Positions 6,536-64,000 of a stretch of 64,000 bases of DNA are shown piece by piece (the stretch's first letter is position 1; each line of letters opens with the position of its first letter). The position numbers and the translations under genes are program-made. The notes under the pieces are model-generated. The model was not told the origin of the DNA, made no database searches, and worked only from the letters and a program-made list of their open reading frames with translations. The stretch spans positions 186,001 to 250,000 of IMG/VR virus record IMGVR_UViG_3300026484_000007. One strand, written 5' to 3'.

Positions 6536-7291
6536 ATGAAAGCTACATTTTCAGAATTAATTTATGAAAGTTATCAATATTTTACAGAATCCACAAAAGG
6601 ATCTAAAAAAGATCACAAGAAAAAAACTACGAAAAAAAGTGGATCTAAACAATCCAAGCAACCTAAATATAGCGAGGATGGGAAATCTGTAGAAGATCAT
6701 TACAGTAAACAGAATACCGTTTTAGGAAATGCCGCAGAATGGGCTGATCCTACTAAAGTTGTTGCTTCTGGTGTTAGAGGTTATGAACTTGGTAAAAAAG
6801 TTGGACATCCAGTAGCTGGGACACTTTTAGGACCAGAAGGAGCAATCGGAGCAGCAAGTAATACTTACGACGATGTTAATCTTGGATCTGTTTATAATTC
6901 TAATGAATTACCAAGAAAAATTCTCGGTTATGGATTAGGAGGTGCTGCAGTTGGTACTGGTTTAGCGTTAATGGGTCATCCTATTCAAGATTTAGATGAT
7001 GCAATTAATCAAGCGAATCCAGTAGATGATCAATCTATTTTTGAAAAAGGATATAATTCCGTTAAAGACTTTTTTGCGCAAGATGCATTACAGAATGATC
7101 CTAAAGATGCTGCAAATATAGTTGGTAAAAGTGCTTTACTTGGAGGTGCTTTAGGTGTAGGTGCTGGAGCAACAATCCCAGCAATGAGATACGCTGGAGG
7201 AAAATTATTCTCTGGAGATCCATATAAAGCAAGACAATTAGCAGGAAATGATGTAAATAATAGATTTTATCCATACGTTGAAAGAGTATAA
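6536..7291 (+). CDS. glycine-zipper protein with processing-type leader
   Basis: MKATFSELIYE|S; GYGLGGAAVGTG and GGALGVGAG zippers. Confidence 0.75.
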   Translation: MKATFSELIYESYQYFTESTKGSKKDHKKKTTKKSGSKQSKQPKYSEDGKSVEDHYSKQNTVLGNAAEWADPTKVVASGVRGYELGKKVGHPVAGTLLGPEGAIGAASNTYDDVNLGSVYNSNELPRKILGYGLGGAAVGTGLALMGHPIQDLDDAINQANPVDDQSIFEKGYNSVKDFFAQDALQNDPKDAANIVGKSALLGGALGVGAGATIPAMRYAGGKLFSGDPYKARQLAGNDVNNRFYPYVERV

Positions 7292-7329
7292 AAAATATAA
7301 AAAAATATAAAAAAAATATAAAAATTATA

Positions 7330-7373
7330 AAAGTGATCCTTCCTGGATCACTTTTTTTGTCGTTAGAAAAAAA
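7330..7373 (+). terminator. intrinsic terminator with conserved tail
   Basis: AAAGTGATCC-TTCCT-GGATCACTTT hairpin + TTTTGTCGTTAGAAAAAA. Confidence 0.85.
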
Positions 7374-7396
7374 CGAAGATCAAAAAGGAAAAAATT

Positions 7397-7705
7397 ATGA
7401 ATACTTTATCATTTCTCAATAAAAGATCTAAAAGAGATCTTTTAAAAATTGAAGAAAATTTTAATAAAGCTGCAGATTCAGAATTTAAATCTGGGATTAT
7501 TGGTGGGGTTCTTGGAGCTGGAGCAGGATATTTCGTTGGAGATCAATTATCGCCTTGGTATGATCATAGCGAGTACGGAGCTAGTAATAATATTATTACT
7601 AATAATTTACATAAAGTTAGTACATTTGGCGGAATGGGAGTAGGAGCCGCAGCAGGAATCGCTGGCGGGACAAAGTTATCAAATGTTTTAAATAAGAATA
7701 AATAA
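7397..7705 (+). CDS. small glycine-zipper protein
   Basis: leader ...LLKIEE|N; GIIGGVLGAGAG and GGMGVGAAAGIAGG. Confidence 0.75.
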   Translation: MNTLSFLNKRSKRDLLKIEENFNKAADSEFKSGIIGGVLGAGAGYFVGDQLSPWYDHSEYGASNNIITNNLHKVSTFGGMGVGAAAGIAGGTKLSNVLNKNK

Positions 7706-7739
7706 AAATAAATAAGAATTAATTTTAAAAGGAGACACT

Positions 7740-8021
7740 ATGAATTTTTTAAATCAGTATGGAATTAAAAATTTAGAATTAATGGAATCTGTTATCGTTT
7801 TATTTGAAAATGAAATTAAAAATCAAATTAAAATTTCTCATCCTGGAGCATTTACAGATTACTGCAAAAAACAAGGATTTTCTGGAGTAACTTGCGATTG
7901 CATATGTAAAGCTATGGCTAGTAATGATAAAACTTTACACAAACGAGCAAATTTTGCTTACAATTTTGGATTTAAGAAAAAAGGACAAACTTGTAGCTGT
8001 ATGGAAAAACAAGGGAAATAA
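7740..8021 (+). CDS. small Cys-rich protein, possible virion protein
   Basis: AAGGAG RBS; LME|S leader; HPGAF...KRANFA. Confidence 0.7.
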   Translation: MNFLNQYGIKNLELMESVIVLFENEIKNQIKISHPGAFTDYCKKQGFSGVTCDCICKAMASNDKTLHKRANFAYNFGFKKKGQTCSCMEKQGK

Positions 8022-8030
8022 GGATCAATT

Positions 8031-9152
8031 ATGCGACAAATAAAATATTTAGAGATCTTAAATGAAGCATCTCGAGTCGACAAAGAACTTAATAAATTAA
8101 GAAAAAGCAATCCAGAAAAAGCTAGAAATATGATGTCTAAGCTTACAGTGCATGCAAATAAATCTATTTTAAATAATAATATTTACACTAAAAAAGATGA
8201 AGGCAAAAAATTTATGGTTGACAAGCCTTTGAATTATAATAAAATACATTTTGCAGCTAACGATAAATTCAATGAAAGTTTTTTTAATGACTTTAAAAAA
8301 AGTTACCGAGAACGATTAAAAGCAATTCCAGAAAACCCTACAATTTCTTCTATTCCAAAAGAAGAATTTAATCAACGATTCGCTGATAGACGTTTTATAA
8401 TGAATAATAATAAAGTAAATAAATTATACGATATGGGATATCTTAATAAAGATGCTTATGATAAAGTCCTGAAAGTAAAAAATTCTGAAAATTTAAAAAA
8501 TCATGTTCCAGAAACATACGATAATCCTAATAAATTTTCTCAAAAAGAAGAATTGAATTATCCAGATAAAAATAATAAAGGGTATACGATCTCTTATCAA
8601 GGAAAAAATTCTTTTGATTTCTTTATGAATAAAAATAAAGAATTTTATAGCAATGTTCCTTTATTTAATAAAGGAGAGAGACAAGCCGTAATTCATCCTC
8701 CTGGGACTATTTATACAAGTGTATTTGATAATAAAGATTCGTATAAAGAGGAGTTAAGATCTTTAAAAGATTCTGATGGAGGAAGTTGGTATGCAATGCG
8801 AACTGGAGAATATGGCGATGAGCCTATTCAAATTAAAGGAAAAATAAAAGGCAAACATATCATTACGCCACCAAACGCAGAAGCTCCTACCGAAGGGTTA
8901 TTGGATAGAGATACAATTCAGAATTTAATCAATAAAAATAAAATAAAAGTAAAAGATTATAAAAATCCTAATGTTTATGATTATAATCAATATGATGATT
9001 CTTATCCTGAACACGTTAACCCTAAATATAATGTAATACGGGCTAAATTAGATCCTGATAGCTTTAATGATATTTCCAACGAAAATGGAACTTACAGATA
9101 CATTGTTTCGCCAAATTATACTTATACAAAACATTTCAAAGGAAAAGGATAA
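8031..9152 (+). CDS. hypothetical virion protein; weakly ADP-ribosyltransferase-like C-terminal half
   Basis: leader ILNE|A; spacing of YQG...IYTS...WYA...TEG is loosely ART-like. Confidence 0.55.
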   Translation: MRQIKYLEILNEASRVDKELNKLRKSNPEKARNMMSKLTVHANKSILNNNIYTKKDEGKKFMVDKPLNYNKIHFAANDKFNESFFNDFKKSYRERLKAIPENPTISSIPKEEFNQRFADRRFIMNNNKVNKLYDMGYLNKDAYDKVLKVKNSENLKNHVPETYDNPNKFSQKEELNYPDKNNKGYTISYQGKNSFDFFMNKNKEFYSNVPLFNKGERQAVIHPPGTIYTSVFDNKDSYKEELRSLKDSDGGSWYAMRTGEYGDEPIQIKGKIKGKHIITPPNAEAPTEGLLDRDTIQNLINKNKIKVKDYKNPNVYDYNQYDDSYPEHVNPKYNVIRAKLDPDSFNDISNENGTYRYIVSPNYTYTKHFKGKG

Positions 9153-9154
9153 TT

Positions 9155-9757: not shown

Positions 9758-9791
9758 AAATAAATAAAAATAAATAAAAAAAGGATAAACA

Positions 9792-10553
9792 ATGGTAATA
9801 TTTTTAAATGAATCAAGTGTTAAAACTATAAAGAACATTGGAAATCATATTAAGCAAGCATCGAGTAAGATGATTAAGAATATAAAAAATATAAAAAATT
9901 TATTATCAAAACCAATTGATTCGGTTAAAATTAATAATTTCCTAAAAAAGAATAAAATCAAAAACGGATCTAAAAAAGATCTTAATGAATCAGAAGAGAT
10001 TCTTTTAGAATCAAAGATAGAAAAAGCCATAAAAAATAAACCAGGAAAACTGACTAACGCTGATACTAACGTTAATGATACTTGTCTTACTGCAGCATTA
10101 AAAATTCTTGGAAAAGAAAAATTAATAGATAAATGCCAAGGATCATTATTAATGTTTTTAAAATTATATAAAAAAGCTGGAGGAGAGTTTGAAAAACTCA
10201 CGAAGGATAATATTGATTCTCTTAAAAAAGGTCATATAATTCTTGCAAATTTTGATCCAAAAAAACTGAAAAGTCCAACGGCAAAAAAAGTTACAACTGG
10301 TTTCGATCCAAAATATGGAGTTATGTCTTCTAACGTTTGGCATGGACCAAGCGGTCATATTATGATAGTAATTAAACCGGATAACGAAAATACATTGTTT
10401 CTTCATAACACGATGAATTCTAATGTAAATGATGCAGTTATCGATCATGCTTTATCATTAGAAATATATAAAGGAACTACTTTTATAAAAAATATCAAAA
10501 ATGAAAAACAATCTGCGTACGTGCTCGATTCTAAAGTTATTGAAAAAATGTAA
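9792..10553 (+). CDS. NlpC/P60-like (papain-fold) amidase/peptidase with processing leader
   Basis: DTCLT (Cys), GHIIL, GHIMIV (His), FLHN; leader FLNE|S and LLE|S. Confidence 0.6.
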   Translation: MVIFLNESSVKTIKNIGNHIKQASSKMIKNIKNIKNLLSKPIDSVKINNFLKKNKIKNGSKKDLNESEEILLESKIEKAIKNKPGKLTNADTNVNDTCLTAALKILGKEKLIDKCQGSLLMFLKLYKKAGGEFEKLTKDNIDSLKKGHIILANFDPKKLKSPTAKKVTTGFDPKYGVMSSNVWHGPSGHIMIVIKPDNENTLFLHNTMNSNVNDAVIDHALSLEIYKGTTFIKNIKNEKQSAYVLDSKVIEKM

Positions 10554-10583
10554 ATAAAAATAAAAAAAATTAAAGGATAATCT

Positions 10584-11147
10584 ATGCTTCCGATGTTTCT
10601 TAATAAAAGATCTTTAAAAGATCTTTTATCGATCGAAGAAAGTTTTTTTAATTTTTTTAAATCTAAAAAATTAAAATACGAGTTTTTAAAAAAGGATCCT
10701 AAAAAGATCTCTCTTGATCATCTCGGTATTTATACGATAAAAGATAATTTAAAGGATAAAAAAATTGGAGAAGTTGAATTAATTATAAAAAATTATAGAA
10801 CTTTTTTAGCAGAATTAAATAAATCTAAAGATAAAGATCTTTCTAAACTTAGATTAACCGATGTAATTTTATTTTATCCAAATAAAAAAATTAATTATTT
10901 TTGTAATTTTCAAAAAGGATCTAAAATAGATGCTACTTCAAAATCTCAGTTTTTTATAGATTTTTTAATTAATTTTCATGAATATTATAAAACGCTTTCA
11001 GTATCAAATAAAGATCCAAAATATAAAAATTATAAAATTGGATTAATAATTACTGATAAAGACGTAAGTGATCTAAAAAAGATCACTTCTATAAAAAGAA
11101 CAATTTCTTTCAGAAAAATAGATAAAGATTTGAATCTAATTTTTTAA
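10584..11147 (+). CDS. hypothetical virion protein
   Basis: leader FLNKRSLKDLLSIEE|S nearly identical to that of 7397..7705. Confidence 0.7.
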   Translation: MLPMFLNKRSLKDLLSIEESFFNFFKSKKLKYEFLKKDPKKISLDHLGIYTIKDNLKDKKIGEVELIIKNYRTFLAELNKSKDKDLSKLRLTDVILFYPNKKINYFCNFQKGSKIDATSKSQFFIDFLINFHEYYKTLSVSNKDPKYKNYKIGLIITDKDVSDLKKITSIKRTISFRKIDKDLNLIF

Positions 11148-11212: not shown

Positions 11213-12169
11213 ATGCCTAAACAATATCAACCTTTTTTAAGCACGATTGATGCTGCTTACAAAGATCTTCGATTTAAAATCGAAGGACGAGAACCGAAAA
11301 AAGTTATCGAAGAAGGTTTATTTCCTGAACCACCAGCGCAACCAACTAGAAAAATGGATCCTATTTCCAATGATTCTGATTCATCTAATATAGCTGGAAA
11401 ACTTGGACTAACGTTAGGTGGTCTTGGTCTAACAGCTTATGGAGCAAATGAATATTTTGATTCAAATGATGCGACTGATACACTTACGCAAGCTAAAGCA
11501 GATGCAAATGAAGTAGTCGATAAAGAAGTTCAAGCGAAAACGCAAGCAAATGTAAAAGATATAAATAATTTCCTTGCTACAAATAATCTAAATAAAATTC
11601 CTGAATATCATTCTAATAATTCTACAGTTTTTGCGAATACAAAAGAATCCGATTTAGCTCATAAACTTTACGTGGGTGGAGAAGGAATTGATACTGATTT
11701 TGAAAAAGCTTTAAATAAGTACCATCACGGAAATAAAGCATTAGTTGACTGGTTAACGAACACTGACGGTGGTTTCGAATGGGATAAATTATGGAAAGGA
11801 TCTTATGATTCTACTAGAAATAATTTATTAGAACAGTTAAAAGAAGCTAAAGCATATGCTGCTGGAAAACCAGTACCACTTAAAATGGGTCATTTAATTG
11901 ATTGGGGATTACATAATCCAGACAATGGAGCAGACGCATCCTCTCAAGCATATTGGGAAAGAGTAGCGAATGAAATACAATCGAAAATTAATAAATTGGA
12001 CGCAGCGGAACAAGAAATGGTTCATAATCTTAAACAACAATACTACGACAAATACATGGATGAACAATTGAAAGATAAATTACTTGCTTTCGATAAAGCT
12101 CATGGAGGCACTGGTAAATTTGATACAGTCGAAGAATTACGAGAATATCTTAAAAAACATAAAGGGTGA
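11213..12169 (+). CDS. glycine-zipper protein
   Basis: VIEE|G; GLTLGGLGLTAYG followed by hydrophilic domain. Confidence 0.75.
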   Translation: MPKQYQPFLSTIDAAYKDLRFKIEGREPKKVIEEGLFPEPPAQPTRKMDPISNDSDSSNIAGKLGLTLGGLGLTAYGANEYFDSNDATDTLTQAKADANEVVDKEVQAKTQANVKDINNFLATNNLNKIPEYHSNNSTVFANTKESDLAHKLYVGGEGIDTDFEKALNKYHHGNKALVDWLTNTDGGFEWDKLWKGSYDSTRNNLLEQLKEAKAYAAGKPVPLKMGHLIDWGLHNPDNGADASSQAYWERVANEIQSKINKLDAAEQEMVHNLKQQYYDKYMDEQLKDKLLAFDKAHGGTGKFDTVEELREYLKKHKG

Positions 12170-14305: not shown

Positions 14306-15199
14306 ATGAAAAGAAAAAAACATTTAAAACATATAAAATACATAAATTATTTAAATGAAACTGCCACTATTGGAGCTCTAAATATAGGAAAAGCTGCAGC
14401 AATTGGAGCTGGGAAAGTAGGAGCCGCGACAGCCACCACTGGAGTTGCTTCTGGAGCTGGAACTGGAGCAACCGCAGGCGCAGGAATAGCTGGACTAAGC
14501 GCGTTAGGATTATCTGGTAAATTAATTAAGAAAACTTCAGAAGGATCTTTTAAAGATCACATTAGTAATTCAAACAATCAAAATATTTCTCAGAATATTC
14601 TAATGAAAGATAAAGAATTATATAATGAAATTTTCAATAAAACCAAACAGTTCGAAAATTCAAAAAATCTTTCAGGTGTTTATGATCACGGGACTACAGT
14701 AGGATATGGTAATGATGTTCGATTTTTAGAAGCTAGAGATTTTAAAGATTGGGCAAACGCAAAATCATTCGAAGGCACCCCATTTCAATCAAAATTTAAA
14801 CAATGGGCTTCTGATGGTAAATTTGATAAAAATGAACAACAAGAATTCGTCAATCTTGTAAATAAAAATCATTTAACTCCTGAGCAAATGAATACTATTT
14901 ACAAACATGAATTTGATGAAAGAATTTTACAATTGAAAAATACGTTAGCTAAAGAAGGTATCGATTTTAGCTCTTTACCTGCAAATGTAAAAAAAGTTTT
15001 AATTGATTTTAATTATAATGCCGGTACTGGAAATCTTTTAAAAACTTTAAAAGCAAAAGGATCTATTGAAGATCTAAAATCAGGCGATTATAATGATTTT
15101 GCTAACGATATTAAAACTAGTAATTGGTATAATAATTTTTTAAGTTCGAATATTGATAGACATCATTATATCGATGGAAATTTATCCGATTACGTTTAA
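14306..15199 (+). CDS. Gly/Ala-rich virion protein with C-terminal T4-lysozyme-like domain
   Basis: leader YLNE|T; TVGYG, FSSLPANVKKVLIDFNYNAG, SNWY. Confidence 0.75.
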   Translation: MKRKKHLKHIKYINYLNETATIGALNIGKAAAIGAGKVGAATATTGVASGAGTGATAGAGIAGLSALGLSGKLIKKTSEGSFKDHISNSNNQNISQNILMKDKELYNEIFNKTKQFENSKNLSGVYDHGTTVGYGNDVRFLEARDFKDWANAKSFEGTPFQSKFKQWASDGKFDKNEQQEFVNLVNKNHLTPEQMNTIYKHEFDERILQLKNTLAKEGIDFSSLPANVKKVLIDFNYNAGTGNLLKTLKAKGSIEDLKSGDYNDFANDIKTSNWYNNFLSSNIDRHHYIDGNLSDYV

Positions 15200-15237
15200 A
15201 CGAAAATGAAAAATTGAAAAAATTAAGGAGATATAAT

Positions 15238-16800
15238 ATGATATCTAATCCAAAAGATTTAAAAAAATTTTCTAAAGATTTTGATTATACTCATTATCTT
15301 AATTATGATAGTGTTCCAAAAATGATTCGAATAGAAGAAGGAGCGGCTAAAGTTCTTGGAGCTGGAGCATTAGGGGCAGGAGCTGGAGCAGGTCTTGGAT
15401 GGTATTTAGGAGATCATGATTTAATCCCAAAAGATCTTGGGGAATTTTTAGGAAATCATGATAGTAAAATGCTTGTTGATAAAGATCAAGCAATTGTAAA
15501 TGAAGAACTTAAGAAGCAATTATTAAATGATGCATTAAAAAGAAATCAAAATGTATTAAATACTTATAGCGAACTTAATAAATTCGCAAATCCATTCAAT
15601 GGTAATCATACTAATGAACCAGAATATTTTAGAAATCATATTTATGATAAAACTAATCATACTTGGGGAGAAGCTGGCACTGAAGTAGTTCGTAAAAAAT
15701 TAATGCACAACATTCAAAATGAATTAAGTGCCATCAGATTAGAAAAAATGGATTTAATTAAGAAATATACTGAGCAAGTTAAACATCTTTTAGCTTTAAA
15801 AAATCAATTAACTCCTACAGATCAACAACTTGTTTTAAAATTAAAAAATGAATTAATGCAAGCTCAAAACGATCCTTCAAATAATTCTCTTGATTTAGTA
15901 AATAATACATATCAAAACTTAATCAAGCAATTTACTATAGACAATGCTTCCGCATCTGGTAAAAATGCAGAGATTCAAAATGTAATTGATACATTTAAGC
16001 AAGATATTGATGCTACTACAGCAAAACTTAATCAAGTGATGGATGCTGAAAAACATTATGAAACTGCTAATAAATATATTAATCAAGGTCAAATAGATAA
16101 AGCGATGAAAGAAATCACTAATCCAGATAAACCTATCATTGATCCGAAAAAAGGTTATGAAGGACAATACGATAATCCTTATCTAAAAACAGCTTATGAA
16201 GATATGACTAAAGATAGACAAATGCAAGCGTATGTTAATGCTTGGAATCATGAACATCCAGATGAAAAAATTGAATACGATTCAATTGCTAATAGATTCA
16301 AAGGAGGATTTTTCAAAGATCATCCTGAATTACAAGATAGAGAAAATTTATTAAAATATTTTAATGATCCTAAACATAAAGAGTTATTTGCTAATAAAGA
16401 TCATTTAAAAGATTACACTGAGAAAAATTTAGACGCGTCTAAATTTACAGAACATAAAACAATTAAGACTGCAGTCGATAAACAACCATTATTGACAAAA
16501 GAACAAGCGATAGGAGCAGGAGCTGCTCTTGGAGGGTTAACGCTTGGAGCGATGGCAGTCGATGATAAAAAAGAAAAATCTGAAGATTTCAATGGATTTG
16601 GAGCTCCTCAATACCCAAACCCAGCATTCCAACCAGTTCATCAACCACTTCAGCAGCCAGCGCAATTACAATTTAATTCCCCAGCGTATGGACAACCTCC
16701 AGTATTTAATACAACTCCAGCTGGAGCATTACCTGCGCCTCAACAAACACCAACTCCAACAGCTCAATCGATATTAAATCAAAAACAACCGAATTCTTAA
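15238..16800 (+). CDS. glycine-zipper protein (N- and C-terminal zippers, Pro/Gln tail)
   Basis: AAGGAG RBS favours ATG 15238; RIEE|G then GAGALGAGAGAGLG; GAGAALGGLTLG. Confidence 0.8.
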   Translation: MISNPKDLKKFSKDFDYTHYLNYDSVPKMIRIEEGAAKVLGAGALGAGAGAGLGWYLGDHDLIPKDLGEFLGNHDSKMLVDKDQAIVNEELKKQLLNDALKRNQNVLNTYSELNKFANPFNGNHTNEPEYFRNHIYDKTNHTWGEAGTEVVRKKLMHNIQNELSAIRLEKMDLIKKYTEQVKHLLALKNQLTPTDQQLVLKLKNELMQAQNDPSNNSLDLVNNTYQNLIKQFTIDNASASGKNAEIQNVIDTFKQDIDATTAKLNQVMDAEKHYETANKYINQGQIDKAMKEITNPDKPIIDPKKGYEGQYDNPYLKTAYEDMTKDRQMQAYVNAWNHEHPDEKIEYDSIANRFKGGFFKDHPELQDRENLLKYFNDPKHKELFANKDHLKDYTEKNLDASKFTEHKTIKTAVDKQPLLTKEQAIGAGAALGGLTLGAMAVDDKKEKSEDFNGFGAPQYPNPAFQPVHQPLQQPAQLQFNSPAYGQPPVFNTTPAGALPAPQQTPTPTAQSILNQKQPNS

Positions 16801-48347: not shown

Positions 48348-48710
48348 ATGGAAAACAATCCTACTATAGTAGATAAGGTACTTTCGAAGATTATCTTCGA
48401 AAACCTTATTAAAAACGGAAAAGTTACTTTAGAAGAAGCTCAAATCATCAATGAAGCAATTATCGAAATCGTTGATAGATATAATCATACTATTATTGAA
48501 GAAACTGCAAAAATCAATACTTTAATGAATGTTCAAAATTCTCAGCCTCAGCAACCTCAACAACCTCAAATTAATGAAGCTGAAATGAATAGAATACTTC
48601 AAAGTATTGAGGAAGCAGCAATCGAAGCTACACAAAACAATCAAAAAATTATTGAAGAATCTGAAGAAATGTCAATTGCAGAAAAACTTGCATCTAAAGT
48701 TTTAAAATAA
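48348..48710 (+). CDS. prohead core-like protein, paralog of 47483 N-terminus
   Basis: LIKNGKVTLEEAQ versus LLKTGKVTIEEAQ. Confidence 0.7.
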   Translation: MENNPTIVDKVLSKIIFENLIKNGKVTLEEAQIINEAIIEIVDRYNHTIIEETAKINTLMNVQNSQPQQPQQPQINEAEMNRILQSIEEAAIEATQNNQKIIEESEEMSIAEKLASKVLK

Positions 48711-48746: not shown

Positions 48747-49255
48747 ATGAATTACTTTGAAAGAGTAAAATTACATGAAATTTGCGAAAGTGTAAAAGAA
48801 ACTTATCTTTTAAATAGCATCGAAGAAAATGCTAATGAAATCGAAGTTCTAAGAACTAAAAAATTCTTAACTGAAACATTTAATACAATTGAAAAATTAT
48901 TAATTGAAGAAGCAATTGCTGATGGTGTAAAAAAAGCAGCAATTATTGGAGCAGCAGGGTTAGCTGGAACAGCTGCAGGTTATGAACTTGGTCATGCTGC
49001 TGATGCAGGGGAATTAGCAGCGGGAAAGTAATTGATCCAGCTGCCCCAGAAGAAGTTGTAGTTGATAAAAATTTAATTACTGCAGATGACGTTGAAAAGC
49101 GAGAGATGAATGCTTTTGCGTTATCTGACTTATACAAACTTGCTCAGCAAAATCCTAATGCTGTTTTATATGGAGGAGCGTTAGGAACAGCTGGGTTAGC
49201 TTCTGGTGCAGTCGCTGCTCAAGCAATGAATTCTCAGAATCCAAGAAGTAGATAA
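48747..49255 (+). CDS. glycine-zipper protein read through a -1 frameshift (94-aa short form ends 49031; ~169-aa long form)
   Basis: G GGA AAG TAA at 49022-49031; -1 frame open to TAA 49253-49255 and encodes second zipper YGGALGTAGLASG. Confidence 0.7.
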
Positions 49256-49352
49256 AAATTATAAAAATATGGAGTTGTGATCTTTTTTAGATCGCTCTCC
49301 AGTTTTTTTGTCGTTAGAAAAAATTCTGAAAAAATTCTGAAAAAAATTATAA

Positions 49353-49635: not shown

Positions 49636-50478
49636 ATGAGTCTTTATACTTTAATTGAAGAAGCTTATAATTCTAAAGAAAAAGCTCTCGCGACAATGGG
49701 ACTTGGTGCTCTTGGAGCAGGAGTAGCTGCATATCATGGTCATAGCGTTGATCAATTAGATAATTTGATAGATAAAGAAACTGGATTAACCGATTTAGAA
49801 GCGAATAACTTTAGAGCAGACGCTGCTTTATCAAAAGATGGAATACTAGGGAAAGTGAAAGGAGTTTTTGATTTATCTACTGGTAAATTAGATCCTCGAG
49901 AATTAGCTAAAGCTTATCAAACAGATCCAGATGTTAAAAATTTAATAGATGAAAAACTAGATCCTGAAAGCAAAAAATATATATTAAAAATTATGAATCT
50001 TCAAGATAAATTCAATGATCATCTTTTTCATATTGAGAATGATAAAAAAGAATTACCTGGGGTATTTAATGGTCATGCAAACGCAACTGCTTACGGAGCA
50101 GCAGGATTAATGGGTGGGGCAGCTCTTGGAGCAGCAGCGACATCAGATACGCTTAATCCTAAAAAAGAAACTAAGCAGTTAAAGAAAATTGAAAAAGATT
50201 ATGAAAAAATTTTAAAAGATAAGCAAAAGCTAGCAGAAGAGCTTGAAAAAGAAAAAGCTTTACAATCGACTGTAAAAGATTATCATTTAGAGTCGACTCC
50301 AGCGCCTCCAGCGCCTCAAGCGCCTCAAGCTCAACCAGCGCCAGTTCAGATACCATTTCATCCAAACGTTCAATATTATTATGATCCATTAAATCCATAT
50401 GGTTTACCAGCTCAATCTACACAACCTACCCAACCTATTCAACCTATTCAACCTATTCAACCTACTTTATTAAGATAA
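49636..50478 (+). CDS. glycine-zipper protein (N- and C-terminal zippers, Pro/Gln tail)
   Basis: MSLYTLIEE|A; GLGALGAGVAA; GAAGLMGGAALG. Confidence 0.8.
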   Translation: MSLYTLIEEAYNSKEKALATMGLGALGAGVAAYHGHSVDQLDNLIDKETGLTDLEANNFRADAALSKDGILGKVKGVFDLSTGKLDPRELAKAYQTDPDVKNLIDEKLDPESKKYILKIMNLQDKFNDHLFHIENDKKELPGVFNGHANATAYGAAGLMGGAALGAAATSDTLNPKKETKQLKKIEKDYEKILKDKQKLAEELEKEKALQSTVKDYHLESTPAPPAPQAPQAQPAPVQIPFHPNVQYYYDPLNPYGLPAQSTQPTQPIQPIQPIQPTLLR

Positions 50479-50496
50479 CTTTTAAAGGAATTAATT

Positions 50497-52284
50497 ATGA
50501 AAAACGAGAAAAAAGAAATGAATTTTAAACCAAAAAAATTTAGAGAAATCGAAGAAAGTTTTTTAAAAAATCTTGGATTATATGGTGGATTGGGAGCAGC
50601 AGGAGCTGCTGCTGCAATCTATGGAAACGATCATTGGGATCCGAATGCGACTCATACTGAAGTTGTTGAAAAAGTAAAACATGGAGTAGGCGCGACTGGG
50701 GATAAAGCTGCATGGGACGCGCATGTAAAAAAGGAAAATGAATTTATAAATAATGAAACAGCTTCCGATTTTAATAAATTAATGAAGGGTAATTTTAGTA
50801 ATTCTAAGAACGATTACCAGGAATACCTAAAACAAACAGAGACTATCGATGATTTTAGAAAACTGACACCAGAACAGCAAAAACATTATATTCTTAGCTT
50901 AGCGGGATATGATTTCGATCATCCTGAAGCTTCTAAAAATACTTTAGCATTAAAGTTTGCTCAAGATTTTTATGCTCAAGAATTAGCTAAACAGTATCCT
51001 GAGGCTAAAAACCCTGAAATTTTTCAAACTATGGCTAAGAATTTCTTTGATAATAATAATACTAATGATACTTGGATGTTTAATAAAGATAATAAATTCG
51101 TTCAAGCTCAAGCAGGAGCTGAAAATTCATTCAACGATGCTTTAAAATTAAACAGTCCTAAAATTGATTTTAAAAATGATTGGACTACTTTTACTCAAAA
51201 TAAAAATCAAGATTATATGAACATGGGAAGAATTTTATCAACAGTTGATGGAAATGGTAATGATAATGGCAACAATTTAGTAAATTTTGGAGATTTTATT
51301 AAAAAAGATGGAACGTTTGATTTCAATAAAGCTTCGCAATTTTATAATGGAGATGTTAATAAAGTTAAAGAATTATATAAAACATTTATCGATGCCGCTG
51401 ATACTGACGCAGGCGATACGTTTTCAGGAGACAATATTAAAAATAAAAATCCTTACCCAAATCCGAATGGATTTTTTGATCATATTTCAAATTATTTTTC
51501 AAAAGGTAATATGCCTTTTAATAAAATTAATTCCATTGATGATTTAAAAGCTTGGAATGAAAAACTTTTAGAGACACAACCAAATGCTGCAAAAATATCA
51601 AATTATGATGCTGTTTATAGTGGATTTTTTAATCCTGATACTATGCATCCAGCTGGAACATTAAACAGTTCTCAAGGGACTGATCTTGATTCTAATTTAG
51701 ATTTTTCAAAATTAACTTTAAAAAGCGATACTACGACACCGTCACCTGTAAAAACAGATTTTGATCAATTCAATAAAAAATATGAATCCTATAAACCATA
51801 CGGAGACCAGGCAAATATTTTTATAAAAAACTGGAGTAATTCTACTGTCTTTGATGGACAAGGTAATGTAAAAGATACAGATTCTGTAGTTAATCCAAAT
51901 GAAAAGTGGAGAGAATTTGATTATGATAAAAATGGTAAGATAGATGAAAAAGATTTTGAAGCTTTTAAAAAGTCGGACGAATATCATAAAAAATTAGAAG
52001 AATACAGAAACAAACATCATTCTGAATACGAAAAAAAATTTTTAGAAAATTATAAAGGCAAAATTCCCGAAAAATATAATCCGGGGCATGATGAAATAAT
52101 CAAAGAAAAGAAAGAAGTAAAAGGTATTACTACTAAACCGATGGCTGGTCTTGTAGGAGCTGGAGCTGGACTTGCTGCAGCAGGTATAAGTTCTGCAATC
52201 GCTAACGCAGCAAAAAAACCTAATCATTCGCAGTTCCCAGCTCATCCAACGTATTCGCCGTATCCAGCATATCCTCATAGATAA
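50497..52284 (+). CDS. large glycine-zipper protein with EF-hand loop
   Basis: EIEE|S; GLYGGLGAAG; DYDKNGKIDEKD; GLVGAGAGLAAAG. Confidence 0.8.
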   Translation: MKNEKKEMNFKPKKFREIEESFLKNLGLYGGLGAAGAAAAIYGNDHWDPNATHTEVVEKVKHGVGATGDKAAWDAHVKKENEFINNETASDFNKLMKGNFSNSKNDYQEYLKQTETIDDFRKLTPEQQKHYILSLAGYDFDHPEASKNTLALKFAQDFYAQELAKQYPEAKNPEIFQTMAKNFFDNNNTNDTWMFNKDNKFVQAQAGAENSFNDALKLNSPKIDFKNDWTTFTQNKNQDYMNMGRILSTVDGNGNDNGNNLVNFGDFIKKDGTFDFNKASQFYNGDVNKVKELYKTFIDAADTDAGDTFSGDNIKNKNPYPNPNGFFDHISNYFSKGNMPFNKINSIDDLKAWNEKLLETQPNAAKISNYDAVYSGFFNPDTMHPAGTLNSSQGTDLDSNLDFSKLTLKSDTTTPSPVKTDFDQFNKKYESYKPYGDQANIFIKNWSNSTVFDGQGNVKDTDSVVNPNEKWREFDYDKNGKIDEKDFEAFKKSDEYHKKLEEYRNKHHSEYEKKFLENYKGKIPEKYNPGHDEIIKEKKEVKGITTKPMAGLVGAGAGLAAAGISSAIANAAKKPNHSQFPAHPTYSPYPAYPHR

Positions 52285-52296
52285 AAGGAGGATTTA

Positions 52297-52845
52297 ATGT
52301 TAAATTATTTACAAGAGCAATCTATAGGGCTTCAAGTTCTAAAATCAAAATTGGTTCCAGAAGAATCAAAAGAAGAATCTAAAAAAGATTCGAAAGAATC
52401 TTCTGGTCTTTTTAAGAAAACAGGTATCTTTACTGGATTAAGAGCTAGCGATAATTTTAGTAAAAATAAAGTAAAAGATGCGATAGATAAAACTTCAGAA
52501 GCCGCTTTCGATTCAATTGGAATGACCGAAAATAAACCTAAAAAAGATAATGAAAAATCTTTTGGTTACATTGCTGACAGCGCGTATCAAAAACTTCAAA
52601 AGATCGATGAAGTAATTAATATTTTTGAAACAACATTTCGCAATAACGTATTGACCGTCAAAGGAACTCATAAAAGAGGTTTACCGTATGTTTCTCTCAC
52701 TAAAGAAAAAATGGCTAAAACTTACAAAAAACCTCGAGCGCATGCTACTGATCCTCTTGGGAAAGATCCAAAACAAGCTGCGATAGATTTAAGAAAAAAT
52801 ACAAGAGTTCTTCAAAAGATCAAACAAGGAACACAAAATGGCTAG
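52297..52845 (+). CDS. hypothetical basic virion protein
   Basis: MLNYLQE| leader; AGGAGG RBS. Confidence 0.7.
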   Translation: MLNYLQEQSIGLQVLKSKLVPEESKEESKKDSKESSGLFKKTGIFTGLRASDNFSKNKVKDAIDKTSEAAFDSIGMTENKPKKDNEKSFGYIADSAYQKLQKIDEVINIFETTFRNNVLTVKGTHKRGLPYVSLTKEKMAKTYKKPRAHATDPLGKDPKQAAIDLRKNTRVLQKIKQGTQNG

Positions 52846-60783: not shown

Positions 60784-60825
60784 TAAAAATACAATAAATT
60801 ATAAAATTTTTTACAAAGGATTCAA

Positions 60826-60999
60826 ATGAAAAAAACAGAAAATGATAAAAATGATAAAAAAATTTTAGAAATAAAAGATCCTTTATCTAAAAAAGATTTA
60901 GAAATAGAAACAATCGTTTGCGATGAATTCTTAGAAGAAGGATCTTTTATAGAAATCGATTTAGACGTTATCGATTTCGTAGAAAAACTTAAAAAATAA
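60826..60999 (+). CDS. small acidic protein (57 aa)
   Basis: AAAGGA RBS; MKKTENDKNDKK...VEKLKK. Confidence 0.6.
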   Translation: MKKTENDKNDKKILEIKDPLSKKDLEIETIVCDEFLEEGSFIEIDLDVIDFVEKLKK

Positions 61000-61055
61000 A
61001 AAAGGATCTTTTTTAGATCCTTTTTAAAAATTAAAAATATAAAGGGAGATTAATA

Positions 61056-61634
61056 ATGTTAGATGATATTCAAAAACCACTTACAACGCTTATAAATATT
61101 TTTAATATTAATTTTATAGTAGGAATTATTTTATTTTCAATCGTTTTTACTATTGGAATGATTTTATTCAAAGATCAAATTAAATATTTATTTTATTCAT
61201 TTATGGATTTTATGAGATCTTTTATAGATCGCAAGTCTACTCAAAAATCTATAAAAGATCAACAGAAGCAATCTTCTTCGTCTTCTCCGCGCGCTCAGCT
61301 TTCTATACAAGAAGCGCAAGAAGTTAGACGATTATTAAACGATATCATTAAAGAAAAATTTAATTTTTATTTAATCAATGAATTATTACCTATGTACTAT
61401 GGTAATAAAAAACCAGATAAAAATGATATTAATGAATTGCAAGAAAGATTTTTCACTGATGTATCGTTATTGATCACAAAGGATCTAAAAAAGATCTTTT
61501 TAAAATATTATACTACAGAAGGTATAAAAATATACATTAATGAACAATTTTTGTATTACGTGAATAAAATTGATAAAGCTTTCTATACTGATCAGACTTC
61601 GATAGTTTCCGACGATTTATATAAATCGATATAA
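61056..61634 (+). CDS. membrane-anchored hypothetical protein
   Basis: N-terminal TM helix. Confidence 0.7.
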   Translation: MLDDIQKPLTTLINIFNINFIVGIILFSIVFTIGMILFKDQIKYLFYSFMDFMRSFIDRKSTQKSIKDQQKQSSSSSPRAQLSIQEAQEVRRLLNDIIKEKFNFYLINELLPMYYGNKKPDKNDINELQERFFTDVSLLITKDLKKIFLKYYTTEGIKIYINEQFLYYVNKIDKAFYTDQTSIVSDDLYKSI

Positions 61635-61696
61635 CAACGTAATAAACGTAAAACGTAATAAAACGTAACAACACGCAACAACGTAAAGGAGAATAA

Positions 61697-64000
61697 ATGC
61701 CTACAAACACAAACAATATAAATCATAAAAATTATAAATTAAAAATTCTTCAAGAGGCATCTTGGGAAGATGCTTTTGAAGATGAAGATCCAGTTGATGA
61801 TGTTGTGGATAGTGCGTCAGCGCTAAACTCTCACGAACAGTCGCTTAAAGCAATATCATCTTTAGAAGATCTCGAAAAGATCGATAAACAGTTTGATTCA
61901 TTATATAAAAATTTTCTTGATAAAAATGATGATATTAATCTTTTTTCAGCGAAAGTTCAACGAATTGAATTGAGTAAAACATCTCAATTATATAAAAGAG
62001 AAAAAGAAAAAGAAGAGCCTGATGATCCTTTCGATGATCATAAACAAGCTCAGGAAGAATTAAATAAACTTTTCAATAATGAATCTAATGATATTCTTAA
62101 GATTTTCCAATCTCAAACTATTCATAATAATAGAAAAGATCTTTATGAGATGTACGATGAAATCGCTGATATAAATTATATTGCGTATAAAATGCTAAGA
62201 GTGTATCTTGATAATATTTTAATTAAGAATGCTCAAACTAAAACATTCATTAATATCAAAGAAAATGAAGATAATAAAAATTTAGCTAAAATCGATGATA
62301 CTAAATTAGATTTTATTAAAAAGATGCTTGATATGTTTTTAGTATTTTTTGATATTCAAAATAAGTTAAAAAACCAAATTGTTCCAAAGACTTTAAAGTA
62401 CGGAGATTTTTATATTGAAGTTGTTGATCTTTCAAAGATCGATAATATTCTTTATAGACAACCTCAATTATTAACTGAAAATTTCGTAATTGAAAATAAT
62501 GGAAGGAAAAAAACTTATAAAAATGTTTCTTACGCTTATCTTGAATTACCGTATAAAGAAAATTTTATGGAGTCTATGGATGCTGAAAACATTAATGAAT
62601 CTAAATTCGGATCTAAAAAAGATTCGATTCATGATTTAAATAATTTAGCTCCAGCAGGCAATAATTTTGAAAATTTGGAAGAATCCTTTCAATACAAACT
62701 TGAAAAATTACGAGATAAATTATCGGCGAGAGTTCTTGAAGAAAGCGATATTCCTTTTTTAAAAAGAAATGATAATGAAGAATTTGATATTGAAAATTTA
62801 TTTAAAATGGATCTTGATAAGATCGAAAATATTTATTTAAGATTACAAGACCCAAGTAAAGTTCTTAAAGTAGAGCAAGATGGAGTACTTTATGGGTATT
62901 TAGTAATCGAAGATGTCGATAGAGAAAAAAATGGGGATGAAGAAGAGATAAACATATACAAACGATTTTTATCGGATAATGAAAGTGGATCAAATGATGA
63001 TGTAAATAAAAATGTTACAAAAAATATTGCTGGAGAAATTTCAGAGAAAATCTCAGAAAGACTTGCGGAATTTATTAATCAGAAAGGTGATTTTGAAGCT
63101 ATTCCAGATGAACTTAAAGCATCATTAAGAGTAATTATTTATCAAAAATTACTTAAGAAATCTAAGATAAAATTTAGATTTTTAGAAACTTCTGATATGG
63201 TAAATTTTCATACAGTGATTGATAAATTTGCTCCATATGGAACGTCAATTTTCGATCCAATTATTCAACCAGTAAAAATGTATACTATTGGATTAATGAC
63301 TTCGATAGTATCAAGACTTAGTAGAGCTGCAGTGATTCGAAAATGGAATATTGAAGTAGGTAATAAAAGAAACTATCAAGCTGTAATCGAGCAAGTTAAA
63401 AAAGATCTTCGTAATAAATCAGTAACATACGATAGTCTTACTAGTATTAAAAATATATCAAAAATGATTACCGATTTTAAAGATATTGCGACAGTTACTA
63501 GAGATGGTCAAAGATTTATCGATCTTGAAGTGATGCCAATGCATGATCGATCTTTACCTATTCAAGAATTACAAGATCTAAAAACAGAATTAATTGCTGC
63601 GACTGGAATTCCTGCGACTTATTTAAATATGCCAGATGCAGTTGATCTTAGAGAGACTCTTGTAAATATTAATATCAATTTTGCAAATACTATTATTAGT
63701 CAGCAAAGTTATATCGAAGATGGTCTGAATATTTTATTTAATATTATTATTAAAAAATTATTAAATTTAAATGGAATACCAGATAAAGGTTTCAATATAT
63801 CTAGTATTTTTAAATTAACTTTAAACACTCCATTAGTACTTCAATTACAACAGAGTGAAGCTCTTGTTGGAAGTATAATTAATATTATTGGAGCATTGAA
63901 TCAAGCTCAGCTTCAGATAGATCCATTAAAATTATTAGAAATGTATATACCTCAAATGAATTGGGAAGCATTGAAAAAATCTGGAGAAGAATTAACTCGA
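61697..64000 (+). CDS. portal protein, T4 gp20-like, partial (runs off right edge)
   Basis: AAGGAG RBS; LKYGDFYIE, PYGTSIFD, SRLSRAAVIRKWNIEVGN, ATGIPATYL. Confidence 0.85.
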   Translation, partial: MPTNTNNINHKNYKLKILQEASWEDAFEDEDPVDDVVDSASALNSHEQSLKAISSLEDLEKIDKQFDSLYKNFLDKNDDINLFSAKVQRIELSKTSQLYKREKEKEEPDDPFDDHKQAQEELNKLFNNESNDILKIFQSQTIHNNRKDLYEMYDEIADINYIAYKMLRVYLDNILIKNAQTKTFINIKENEDNKNLAKIDDTKLDFIKKMLDMFLVFFDIQNKLKNQIVPKTLKYGDFYIEVVDLSKIDNILYRQPQLLTENFVIENNGRKKTYKNVSYAYLELPYKENFMESMDAENINESKFGSKKDSIHDLNNLAPAGNNFENLEESFQYKLEKLRDKLSARVLEESDIPFLKRNDNEEFDIENLFKMDLDKIENIYLRLQDPSKVLKVEQDGVLYGYLVIEDVDREKNGDEEEINIYKRFLSDNESGSNDDVNKNVTKNIAGEISEKISERLAEFINQKGDFEAIPDELKASLRVIIYQKLLKKSKIKFRFLETSDMVNFHTVIDKFAPYGTSIFDPIIQPVKMYTIGLMTSIVSRLSRAAVIRKWNIEVGNKRNYQAVIEQVKKDLRNKSVTYDSLTSIKNISKMITDFKDIATVTRDGQRFIDLEVMPMHDRSLPIQELQDLKTELIAATGIPATYLNMPDAVDLRETLVNININFANTIISQQSYIEDGLNILFNIIIKKLLNLNGIPDKGFNISSIFKLTLNTPLVLQLQQSEALVGSIINIIGALNQAQLQIDPLKLLEMYIPQMNWEALKKSGEELTR

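What the first reader, a model, noticed from the sequence alone, without database searches (positions are those of the whole stretch)
6536..62000. Shared capsid-targeting / prohead-protease-type leaders on many unrelated proteins
Seen: MKATFSELIYE|S, MRQIKYLEILNE|A, MVIFLNE|S, MSLYTLIEE|A, MYLALMIEE|S, MLNYLQE|Q, LNYLNE|A, INYLNE|T, portal KILQE|A. The leader FLNKRSxxDLLxIEE is shared by two otherwise unrelated proteins (7397, 10584). Established: T4 gp21 cleaves after (L/I)xE and T4 internal proteins carry short N-terminal capsid-targeting sequences ending in E. Inference: a portable packaging tag marks a large injected proteome.
Basis: partly seen in the sequence, partly recalled or inferred. 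Interest (0 to 1): 0.6.

Follow-up and report, generated by a model that had tools for sequence, protein, structure and literature searches.

The report
Cleavable head-targeting leaders in jumbo phage
About twenty otherwise unrelated proteins of an uncultivated 273-kb phage start with a short shared peptide ending in Leu/Ile-x-Glu, most likely a T4-style address tag that brings them into the forming head and is then cut off by the head protease: a known mechanism, seen here in a new phage lineage and on an unusually large, fast-evolving cargo set.

Summary

- **Enrichment:** a strict form of the motif ([LI][NEQY]E followed by a small or polar residue, in the first 30 residues) occurs in 23 of 131 plus-strand (late) ORFs and 3 of 142 minus-strand ORFs. 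Decoy motifs show no such bias. The loose (L/I)xE alone is not enriched.
- **The phage:** the window is part of a 272.6-kb, 27% GC jumbo phage. Outside the window it encodes a T4 gp21 / phiKZ gp175-type prohead protease and a gp23-like capsid protein.
- **Motif positions:** the same L/I-x-E motif sits where such proteases are known to cut. These places are the capsid protein propeptide, both ends of the protease, two scaffold-like proteins and the portal.
- **Relatives:** related metagenomic phages carry homologous leaders in their own "dialects" on several non-homologous proteins each. The cargo bodies have diverged beyond BLAST detection.
- **Cargo feature:** 16 of 19 proteins with Gly/Ala-rich zipper segments carry the leader, often directly after the predicted cut.

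Best reading: T4-like cleavable capsid-targeting leaders. Cleavage, packaging and injection are inferred, not shown. This is a new member of a known kind, of moderate interest.

The parts
6536..6568 (+). Short leader of ORF 6536-7291 (251 aa); predicted cut after Glu11
   Evidence: P3 Ile, P1 Glu; SD upstream. Three Gly/Ala-rich segments downstream.
7397..7456 (+). Long leader (FLNKRS..DLL.IEE type) of ORF 7397-7705 (102 aa); predicted cut after Glu20
   Evidence: Gly-zipper Pfam hits (PF13441, 27.3 bits, just under the cut-off). Two Gly/Ala segments.
7740..7808 (+). Long leader of ORF 7740-8021 (93 aa); predicted cut after Glu23
   Evidence: The ortholog in L006 (68% identity) carries that phage's MYLT-type leader.
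8031..8066 (+). Short leader of ORF 8031-9152 (373 aa); predicted cut after Glu12
   Evidence: No family hit for the body.
9792..9812 (+). Short leader (FLNE) of ORF 9792-10553 (253 aa); predicted cut after Glu7, second motif at residue 66
10584..10640 (+). Long leader of ORF 10584-11147 (187 aa), near-identical to that of 7397; predicted cut after Glu19
11213..11314 (+). N-terminal 34 residues of ORF 11213-12169 ending in IEE; weaker candidate
14306..14359 (+). Short leader (NYLNE) of ORF 14306-15199 (297 aa); predicted cut after Glu18, directly followed by a 55-residue Gly/Ala stretch and a lysozyme-like C-terminal domain
15238..15339 (+). Extended leader of ORF 15238-16800 (520 aa; the ATG with an SD is preferred to the TTG at 15214); predicted cut after Glu34, Gly/Ala segment starts at residue 35
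33595..33729 (+). Leader region of ORF 33595-34326 (243 aa) with three motif sites (residues 9, 27, 45); Gly/Ala segment starts at residue 46
34376..34525 (+). About 50-residue N-terminal extension of an RNA polymerase subunit (ORF 34376-35728), ending in IEE
   Evidence: PHROG RNAP beta hits. The G1 ortholog aligns only from residue 74, so it lacks the extension..
35975..36082 (+). Long leader (FYLNQ...LIEE) of ORF 35975-37066 (363 aa); predicted cut after Glu36
   Evidence: The L006 homolog aligns its own N-terminal leader to this stretch..
37753..37812 (+). Long leader of ORF 37753-38496 (247 aa); predicted cut after Glu20
   Evidence: EF-hand hits (PF13202, 26.2 bits). Gly/Ala segments.
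38493..38537 (+). Short leader (NYLNE) of ORF 38493-39260 (255 aa); predicted cut after Glu15
   Evidence: Dockerin/EF-hand loops.
47483..48316 (+). Acidic Pro/Ala/Glu-rich scaffold-like protein with 6 motif sites
   Evidence: Motif density p = 1.4e-7 against the minus-strand rate. Paralog of 48348. The T(L/I)EE|A site is conserved in G1 and G4 homologs.
48348..48710 (+). Small core/scaffold-like protein, 6 motif sites in 120 aa
   Evidence: p = 1e-9.
48747..48827 (+). First of two conserved motif sites (residues 27 and 55) of ORF 48747-49031 (94 aa), followed by a Gly/Ala segment
   Evidence: Both sites are conserved in G1, G2 and G4 homologs..
49636..49662 (+). Short leader of ORF 49636-50478 (280 aa); predicted cut after Glu9
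50497..50556 (+). Leader of ORF 50497-52284 (595 aa); predicted cut after Glu20, Gly/Ala segment starts at residue 21, a second one near the C-terminus
52297..52317 (+). Short leader (NYLQE) of ORF 52297-52845 (182 aa); predicted cut after Glu7
61697..61756 (+). N-terminal 20 residues of the portal protein (ORF from 61697, 787 aa, runs past the window end), ending in LQE
   Evidence: PHROG portal hit. The G1 portal has LINE at the aligned place.
62732..62743 (+). Internal (V/I/L)LEE site of the portal (own residue 349), just before the conserved portal core
   Evidence: Conserved in own, G1 and G2 portals. The PHROG portal match starts at residue 340.

Best explanation
The window is the late region of an uncultivated 272.6-kb jumbo phage. 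The phage combines a T4-type head module (gp23-like capsid protein, gp21/gp175-type prohead protease, gp20-like portal, T4-type large terminase) with two sets of split multisubunit RNA polymerase genes.

About 19 proteins in the window, and roughly 27-30 in the genome, begin with a 7-45-residue amphipathic leader. The leader comes in two forms:
- a short form, aromatic-L/I-N-E;
- a long form, aromatic-L-N-K, about 8 residues, then L-L-x-x-E-E.

Both forms end in (L/I)-x-E followed by a small or polar residue.

Proposed mechanism, by analogy with the T4 capsid targeting sequence:
1. The leader docks the precursor onto the scaffolding core of the prohead. Candidate core proteins are 47483, 48348 and 48747.
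2. The prohead protease, encoded outside the window at genome 6204-7040, cuts after the Glu.
3. The leader peptide leaves the head and the mature protein stays inside with the DNA.

Many of the mature proteins would then begin at or near a Gly/Ala-rich zipper-type hydrophobic segment. One also carries a lysozyme-like domain. They are therefore most likely ejection proteins that act on the host envelope, alongside the virion RNA polymerase.

What is shown: the motif and its specificity, its enrichment, the protease gene, conservation of the sites, and homologous leaders on non-homologous proteins in relatives.

What is inferred: cleavage, the targeting role, presence in the virion, and injection.
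For: **Phage context**
- Searches identify terminase, portal, an adaptor and split RNA polymerase subunits with diverged minus-strand paralogs.
- The genome is one 272,602-bp contig at 27% GC.

**Protease and capsid protein**
- The protease hits PF20034 at 33.8 bits (cut-off 23.4).
- Its orthologs hit both PF03420 and PF20034.
- The GELDHP and GFSLRAFG blocks are conserved.
- The capsid protein is gp23-like.

**Motif statistics and decoys**

**Sites at canonical positions**
- The capsid protein has LILE at residue 10 and (L/I)(L/I)EE at residue 75. Both are conserved through about 30 homologs down to 40% identity.
- The protease has an N-terminal ILEE and C-terminal LEE sites, conserved in six phages.
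- The scaffold-like proteins have 6 sites each (p = 1e-9 and 1e-7).
- The portal and two further families have conserved sites.

**Portability**
- The 7397/10584 leader pair scores 65, with no shuffled pair reaching 50 and no similarity elsewhere.
- Phage G4/L011 has 6-7 proteins with an M-I-L-E-I-N-K-K..L.E-E leader. Their bodies share no BLAST similarity.
- Phage G1 has at least 7 proteins with an I-E-K-K-I-E.L-I-E-E leader.
- L006, L008 and L009 have further variants.

**Fast-evolving cargo**
- Core genes have orthologs in G1 and G2. The leader-bearing cargo has none, although positional counterparts with a leader plus Gly zipper exist.

**Independent second feature**
- 16 of 19 proteins with Gly/Ala-rich uncharged segments carry the N-terminal motif (odds ratio 66, p = 1e-13).

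**Literature**
- The T4 capsid targeting sequence is the first 10 residues of IPIII. It is portable, cut by gp21, and sits on poorly conserved internal proteins (PMC9026906).
- In SPN3US, propeptides are inferred to target proteins into the head, and the mature ejection protein gp47 begins with a transmembrane segment (PMC5694885).
Against: - There is no proteomic, structural or genetic evidence, because the phage is known only from metagenomes.
- The strict regex was shaped on the window itself. The held-out test outside the window is weak (p = 0.035).
- The loose (L/I)xE motif is too common to predict cleavage on its own.
- A six-frame search of the own genome with PF03420 found nothing. The protease assignment rests on PF20034 and on the orthologs.
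- The leader plus Gly-zipper module could be inherited by duplication rather than exchanged.
- ORF 14306 could instead be a signal-arrest-release type endolysin.
- Some leaders are weak candidates (11213, 34376, the N-terminus of 48747).
- Interaction modelling of the protease with a leader could not be run.
Confidence: 0.65

Rival explanations
1. Cleavage-only propeptides. The N-terminal peptides are substrates of the prohead protease but carry no targeting information. Incorporation into the head would depend on the protein bodies, for example on the Gly-zipper segments, and the peptide would only keep the proteins inactive until maturation.
For: The conserved element common to all carriers is the cut site itself. 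Very short leaders of 7-9 residues (9792, 49636, 52297) leave little room for a docking signal. In SPN3US the role of propeptides is still only inferred (PMC10052503).
Against: Residues upstream of the cut (aromatic-L-N, K-K, L-L) are shared within each phage. They change together between phages, giving 'dialects'. This is expected for a signal read by a co-evolving receptor and is not needed for a protease with a three-residue specificity. In T4 the targeting residues (4 and 7) are distinct from the processing residues (8 and 10) (PMC9026906).
Confidence: 0.15
2. Deep paralogy. The leader-bearing proteins are one old, fast-diverging family (leader plus Gly zipper plus variable body) expanded by tandem duplication. 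The shared N-termini would be inherited, not a portable tag on unrelated proteins.
For: The carriers lie in tandem clusters: 6536-11147, 14306-16800, 37753-39260 and 48747-52845. 16 of 19 Gly/Ala-segment proteins carry the motif. Several share EF-hand-like loops. phiKZ internal head proteins are a paralog family (bioRxiv 10.1101/2024.03.24.586471).
Against: The same type of leader or cut site also sits on clearly different folds: the gp23-like capsid protein, the protease, the portal, an RNA polymerase subunit, a lysozyme-like protein, and in relatives next to an Acb1 domain. There is no BLAST similarity among the bodies in this genome or in G4. 7397 and 10584 are 76% identical in leader DNA and unalignable afterwards.
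Confidence: 0.12
3. Host-membrane proteins. The Gly/Ala-rich proteins are late membrane proteins made for lysis, superinfection exclusion or anchoring of assembly (holin or SAR-endolysin-like). The N-terminal peptide would be a cytoplasmic amphipathic helix and would not be cut.
For: Gly/Ala/Ser-rich weakly hydrophobic N-terminal segments are typical of signal-arrest-release domains (own knowledge). 14306 joins such a segment to a lysozyme-like domain.
Against: There are seventeen such proteins, far more than a lysis cassette needs. They lie among head genes. The leader also occurs on soluble proteins and on shell and portal proteins. The Gly/Ala stretch of 14306 is about 55 residues long. Another endolysin candidate may exist at genome 75685-76089, but that rests on sequence appearance only and was not tested.
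Confidence: 0.05
4. Chance or composition. An AT-rich genome produces many N-termini rich in L, I, N, K and E, and the motifs would be noise.
For: The loose motif is equally common in late and early genes. L, I, K, N and E are each 8-11% of residues.
Against: Minus-strand genes of the same composition show 3 of 142. Decoy motifs are flat. The association with Gly/Ala segments has p = 1e-13. The sites are conserved in orthologs across phages of 26-36% GC.
Confidence: 0.02

Closest known systems
Phage T4 capsid targeting sequences (IPI, IPII, IPIII, Alt, gp24) cut by prohead protease gp21
   Same: Short N-terminal peptide ending in (L/I)-x-E. Shared by proteins with unrelated, poorly conserved bodies. 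A gp21-family protease with its own L-x-E site near its N-terminus and C-terminal processing. A gp23-like capsid protein with an N-terminal propeptide. Scaffold or core proteins cut many times (PMC9026906, PMC5694885).
   Different: The host phage is a 273-kb jumbo phage with two multisubunit RNA polymerase sets. There are many more carriers, about 27-30 against a handful. A second, longer two-part leader form exists. The cargo is dominated by Gly/Ala-zipper proteins rather than small basic internal proteins. The portal appears to carry sites, whereas T4 gp20 is not processed (PMC5694885).
Head-protein processing in phiKZ-like giant phages (phiKZ gp175, SPN3US gp245, 201phi2-1)
   Same: Protease of the S80 family. 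Many head and ejection proteins are processed, including the portal and sometimes a virion RNA polymerase subunit. Mature SPN3US gp47 begins with a transmembrane segment. A virion RNA polymerase is packaged (PMC5694885, PMC10052503).
   Different: In those phages the motif is (S/A/G)-x-E or A-x-E and most propeptides exceed 100 residues. Here P3 is L or I and most leaders are 7-36 residues. No phiKZ internal head protein domain (PF12699) is found in this genome or in two relatives. The capsid protein is T4-sized (520 aa).
Ejection proteins of short-tailed phages (T7 gp14-16, P22 gp7/16/20, N4)
   Same: Internal head proteins that leave with the DNA and act on the envelope, some with a cell-wall hydrolase domain (PMC8954989).
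   Different: Those proteins are not known to carry a common cleaved N-terminal tag. The phage here has a contractile-tail gene set (sheath-like and baseplate-like hits).
Encapsulin cargo-loading peptides
   Same: A short portable peptide directs diverse cargo into an HK97-fold shell (own knowledge).
   Different: The encapsulin peptide is usually C-terminal and is not cleaved. There is no DNA and no protease.

Membership tests
T4-type capsid targeting sequence / gp21-cleaved propeptide | Short N-terminal peptide ending in (L/I)-x-E | tested here: met
   19 window ORFs with P3 L/I and P1 E at residues 7-50. The enrichment is specific to L/I and E.
T4-type capsid targeting sequence / gp21-cleaved propeptide | The same leader on proteins whose bodies are not homologous | tested here: met
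   (BLAST level only; deep paralogy is not excluded).
T4-type capsid targeting sequence / gp21-cleaved propeptide | Genome encodes a gp21-family prohead protease | tested here: met
   PF20034 at 33.8 bits. Orthologs hit PF03420 and PF20034. The own-genome six-frame PF03420 search was negative.
T4-type capsid targeting sequence / gp21-cleaved propeptide | The peptide is actually removed during head maturation | not testable with these tools
   Needs virion mass spectrometry. The only evidence here is conservation of the sites.
T4-type capsid targeting sequence / gp21-cleaved propeptide | The peptide is sufficient to package a foreign protein | not testable with these tools
   Needs leader-reporter fusions in a cultivable relative.
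phiKZ-type giant-phage head propeptides | Cleavage motif (S/A/G)-x-E and mostly long (>100 aa) propeptides | tested here: not met
   P3 is L or I at all curated sites and leaders are mostly 7-36 aa. Motif and lengths of the reference phages are taken from PMC5694885.
phiKZ-type giant-phage head propeptides | Internal head proteins with the phiKZ_IP domain (PF12699) | tested here: not met
   No match in G000, G001 or G004 at E <= 1.
phiKZ-type giant-phage head propeptides | S80 protease plus a virion-type multisubunit RNA polymerase set among late genes | tested here: met
   Assigning the plus-strand set to the virion is an inference.
Sec or lipoprotein signal peptide | Positive n-region, uninterrupted hydrophobic core, small-x-small site | tested here: not met
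   The leaders are charged and amphipathic and end in Glu. A classical signal peptide occurs at 45177 and looks different.
Signal-arrest-release endolysin (for ORF 14306 only) | N-terminal weakly hydrophobic Gly/Ala-rich segment followed by a lysozyme domain | tested here: inconclusive
   The architecture fits. However, the Gly/Ala stretch is about 55 residues long and is preceded by the shared leader.

The most novel reading that the evidence does not exclude
Maturation cleavage does more than remove an address tag. In at least nine proteins the predicted cut lies within 10 residues of a Gly/Ala-zipper hydrophobic segment, and in four it lies directly in front of it. The protease would then unmask a fusion-peptide-like N-terminus, as in class I viral fusion proteins. 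After ejection, this large and fast-evolving set of primed membrane-active proteins would insert into or remodel the host membrane, forming a channel or an early-infection vesicle around the DNA and the virion RNA polymerase. The clade-wide leader would also give a purely computational way to read the injected proteome of uncultivated jumbo phages, including anti-defence enzymes such as the Acb1-like proteins of relatives.
Probability: 0.2. Interest if true: 0.75.

Novelty: new member of a known kind. Interest (0 to 1): 0.45.

Why it matters
How giant phages choose which proteins to load into the head and deliver with the DNA is poorly understood. In the studied phiKZ-like phages the propeptides are long and have no clear consensus.

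This lineage offers a short, recognisable, clade-wide leader with phage-specific variants. It allows the packaged proteome of uncultivated phages to be predicted from sequence. It also points to candidate receptor (scaffold) proteins, and it could be tested as a packaging tag in a cultivable relative.

The cargo set is an unexplored source of early-acting phage proteins: Gly-zipper proteins, a lysozyme-like protein, calcium-loop proteins, and Acb1-like enzymes in relatives.

Tried and rejected
**Searches that found nothing or too little**
- Megablast of 20 kb of the window against deposited phages: no match.
- tblastn of the terminase: the best hits are only 27% identical T4-like cyanophages.
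- A single-protein scan of viral contigs with the terminase found nothing. An alignment of capsid proteins was needed to find relatives.
- Six-frame PF03420 search of the own genome: negative.
- PDB sequence search with the protease: nothing useful.
- PHROGs and Pfam on the cargo: almost no hits.
- Exhaustive HMMER search with 14306: four weak relatives only, through the lysozyme-like domain.
- ESM Atlas for 8031 and 10584: no usable lead. An ADP-ribosyltransferase cluster scored 0.84, which is at chance level.
- Rfam on the window: no match.

**Steps that failed or could not run**
- Loci around relatives' terminases turned out not to be syntenic, though their ORFs still showed leaders.
- Records behind ENA and NCBI loci could not be searched whole.
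- AlphaFold2 of 9792 without an alignment: pLDDT 35, unusable, so no fold search was made.

**Ideas dropped**
- The aromatic-L/I-N tripeptide alone as a marker is not significant outside the window.
- The TTG starts at 15214 and 35801 were rejected in favour of ATGs that have a Shine-Dalgarno sequence.
- A nuclear-import-signal reading was considered and dropped, because the motif also sits on shell, portal and protease proteins. The presence of a phage-nucleus shell protein was not tested.

**Scope notes**
- Only genetic code 11 was used.

Full report
**What the window is.** The window is bases 186001-250000 of a single 272,602-bp contig with 27% GC, a virus record judged 97% complete. Genes fall into a plus-strand block and a minus-strand block.

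In the window, PHROGs identify the following:
- a large terminase (12425-14290);
- a head-tail adaptor-like protein (5725);
- endonuclease VII (9155);
- a primase-like protein (18417);
- a portal (61697 onward);
- three pieces of a split multisubunit RNA polymerase (31427, 34376, 42021).

The polymerase pieces have diverged paralogs on the minus strand. The phage therefore has two polymerase sets, as phiKZ-like phages do. That the plus-strand set is the virion enzyme is an inference.

No deposited phage is close. Metagenomes hold a clade of relatives with contigs of 270-290 kb.

A stricter form does discriminate. It requires L/I, then N/E/Q/Y, then E, then a small or polar residue.

| Set | ORFs with the motif in the first 30 residues |
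|---|---|
| All plus-strand ORFs | 23 of 131 |
| Plus-strand ORFs in the window | 16 of 55 |
| Plus-strand ORFs outside the window (held out) | 7 of 76 |
| Minus-strand ORFs | 3 of 142 |

- The window against the minus strand gives p = 1e-7. The held-out set gives p = 0.035.
- This regex was shaped on the window, so I ran decoys. P1 Asp gives 2 vs 2, P1 Lys 5 vs 5, P3 V/M/F 3 vs 3, and the reversed motif 6 vs 7. The bias is specific to L/I at P3 and Glu at P1.
- An assumption-free test compared all N-terminal 24-mers with each other. It ranks the 7397/10584 pair (score 65) as the best pair that is not a full-length paralog, and no shuffled pair reaches 50.
- The two leaders are 39/51 identical in DNA. 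The two proteins show no similarity afterwards.

There are two leader forms. The short one is aromatic-L/I-N-E. The long one is aromatic-L-N-K, about eight residues, then L-L-x-x-E-E.

**The protease and its expected substrates.** Both genes lie outside the window.
- Genome 6204-7040 encodes a 278-aa protein that passes the Pfam threshold for Peptidase_S80, the phiKZ gp175 family.
- Its orthologs in four relatives hit both Peptidase_S77 (T4 gp21) and S80.
- They share the GELDHP and GFSLRAFG blocks.
- Genome 12513-14075 is a gp23-like capsid protein of 520 aa.

The L/I-x-E motif sits where this kind of protease is known to act.
- **Capsid protein:** L-I-L-E at residue 10 and (L/I)(L/I)-E-E at residue 75. 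Both are conserved through about 30 sampled homologs down to 40% identity.
- **Protease:** an N-terminal I-L-E-E and several C-terminal L-E-E sites, conserved in six phages. This matches the LIE-9 site and the C-terminal autoprocessing described for T4 gp21 and SPN3US gp245 (PMC9026906, PMC5694885).
- **Scaffold-like proteins:** two paralogous acidic proteins, 47483 and 48348, carry six sites each. Against the minus-strand rate this gives p = 1.4e-7 and 1e-9. Sites in the 47483/48348 and 48747 families are conserved in relatives. They resemble T4 scaffold and core proteins, which are cut into small peptides.
- **Portal:** an N-terminal site, plus a conserved (V/I/L)-L-E-E just before its conserved core.

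**Portability and conservation across the clade.** I fetched three related IMG/VR records: G001 (281 kb, 56% capsid identity), G002 (227 kb, 47%) and G004 (167 kb, 62%). I also fetched loci from other relatives.

Each phage has its own variant of the leader on several proteins.
- **G4/L011:** M-I-L-E-I-N-K-K..L.E-E on six to seven proteins. Their bodies show no BLAST similarity to each other.
- **G1:** I-E-K-K-I-E.L-I-E-E on at least seven proteins.
- **L006:** an M-Y-L-T/S type, including orthologs of window ORFs 7740 and 35975 whose leaders align with ours.
- **L008 and L009:** further variants, some next to an Acb1 domain.

Core genes (capsid, protease, portal, terminase, polymerase subunits) have clear orthologs in G1 and G2. 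The leader-bearing cargo has none. Even so, leader plus Gly-zipper proteins occupy the corresponding positions. T4-like phages show the same pattern of a conserved tag on hypervariable bodies (PMC9026906).

Upstream leader residues change together within a genome. That pattern argues for a signal read by a co-evolving receptor, not just a three-residue protease site.

**What the cargo looks like.** Twenty proteins of the genome have uncharged Gly/Ala-rich segments. Seventeen are on the plus strand and thirteen are in the window. With the 60-aa length cut-off applied, 19 such proteins remain, and 16 of them carry the N-terminal motif (odds ratio 66, p = 1e-13).
- Many have one such segment right after the predicted cut and another near the C-terminus. 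In 14306, 15238, 33595 and 50497 the segment starts at the first residue after the Glu.
- ORF 7397 gives near-threshold Gly-zipper Pfam hits.
- ORFs 37753, 38493 and 50497 have EF-hand or dockerin-type calcium loops.
- ORF 14306 ends in a lysozyme-like domain.
- No phiKZ internal head protein domain is present.

A mature N-terminal transmembrane segment is also described for the SPN3US ejection protein gp47 (PMC5694885).

**Interpretation.** The best-supported reading is a T4-like system. Cleavable N-terminal leaders bring a large, fast-evolving set of proteins into the prohead, and a gp21/gp175-type protease removes them. Cleavage, the targeting role, presence in the virion and injection are all inferences.

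The rivals, scored in the rival section, are:
- propeptides that are cut but carry no targeting information;
- deep paralogy of a leader plus Gly-zipper module;
- late host-membrane proteins, including a SAR-endolysin reading of 14306;
- chance or composition, which contradict.

**Comparison and novelty.**
- *Function:* this works like the T4 capsid targeting sequence.
- *Membership:* it meets every sequence-level criterion I could test. It does not meet the phiKZ-type criteria, which are a (S/A/G)-x-E motif, long propeptides and the PF12699 domain.
- *What is new:* the lineage, a jumbo phage with a T4-type head plus two polymerase sets. Also new are the number of carriers, the long two-part leader with phage-specific variants, and the Gly-zipper cargo class.
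- *Verdict:* a new member of a known kind, of moderate interest.

The more novel possibility is that cleavage unmasks fusion-peptide-like N-termini of injected membrane-active proteins. The evidence does not exclude this, but it is unsupported beyond sequence geometry.

**Limits.**
- The single-sequence structure prediction failed.
- Blanks from length-restricted or word-based searches are not used as evidence of absence.
- Only genetic code 11 was used.

Noticed in passing
window 29563-29748 and 30413-30598; core copies at 29605, 29756, 30455: A 186-nt direct repeat (94% identical) and a 63-nt core present three times. The core consists of tandem GC-rich hairpins in a 27% GC genome, and the copies flank the small ORF 30045-30329. 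No Rfam family and no tRNA were found, although a T-loop-like GGTTCGATTCC string lies near 29290. These could be strong promoter or terminator cassettes, or small structured RNAs.
   Followed up: partly
window 3973-5517: A phage protein with an N-terminal hydrophobic region and a histidine-kinase-type ATPase domain (PF02518, 45.7 bits). A relative encodes a stand-alone response-regulator receiver near its capsid gene (L010 5462-5836). Together these hint at a phage-borne two-component-like pair.
   Followed up: no
L008 8704-9444, L009 6844-7428, G001 100464-101189 (locus L052): Relatives encode Acb1-like (anti-CBASS phosphodiesterase family, PF23474) proteins next to the terminase. In L009 the leader-like helix is at the N-terminus. 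In L008 and G001 it follows a small Cys-containing domain and a Lys-rich linker. This suggests an anti-defence enzyme that may be packaged. No Acb1 match was found in the window's own genome.
   Followed up: partly
window 37753-38496, 38493-39260, 50497-52284; genome 9848-12283: Several leader-bearing proteins have EF-hand or dockerin-type calcium-binding loops (PF13202 26.2 bits, PF00404 29.7 bits). The meaning for head-internal proteins is unknown.
   Followed up: no
genome 102687-103100, 103133-104029, 129928-131127 (minus strand, outside the window): Three early-strand paralogs share an N-terminus of the form M-K-I-R-L-G-F-V-S-N followed by a serine run. The family was not identified.
   Followed up: no
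G001 45134-81472 and 119542 (loci L027-L030): In a relative, nine or more tail-fibre-like proteins of very different lengths share a conserved N-terminal module of about 25 residues. This is a second example of a shared N-terminal adaptor, here probably for attachment to the baseplate.
   Followed up: no
window 34376-34525: This RNA polymerase subunit has an N-terminal extension of about 60 residues that is missing from the G1 ortholog. The extension ends in an I-E-E site, which recalls the processed virion polymerase subunit of phage 201phi2-1 (PMC5694885).
   Followed up: partly
window 8031-9152: The nearest named Atlas cluster for this leader-bearing protein is an ADP-ribosyltransferase family (score 0.84, at chance level). 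I mention it only because T4 Alt, a packaged ADP-ribosyltransferase, carries a capsid targeting sequence.
   Followed up: no
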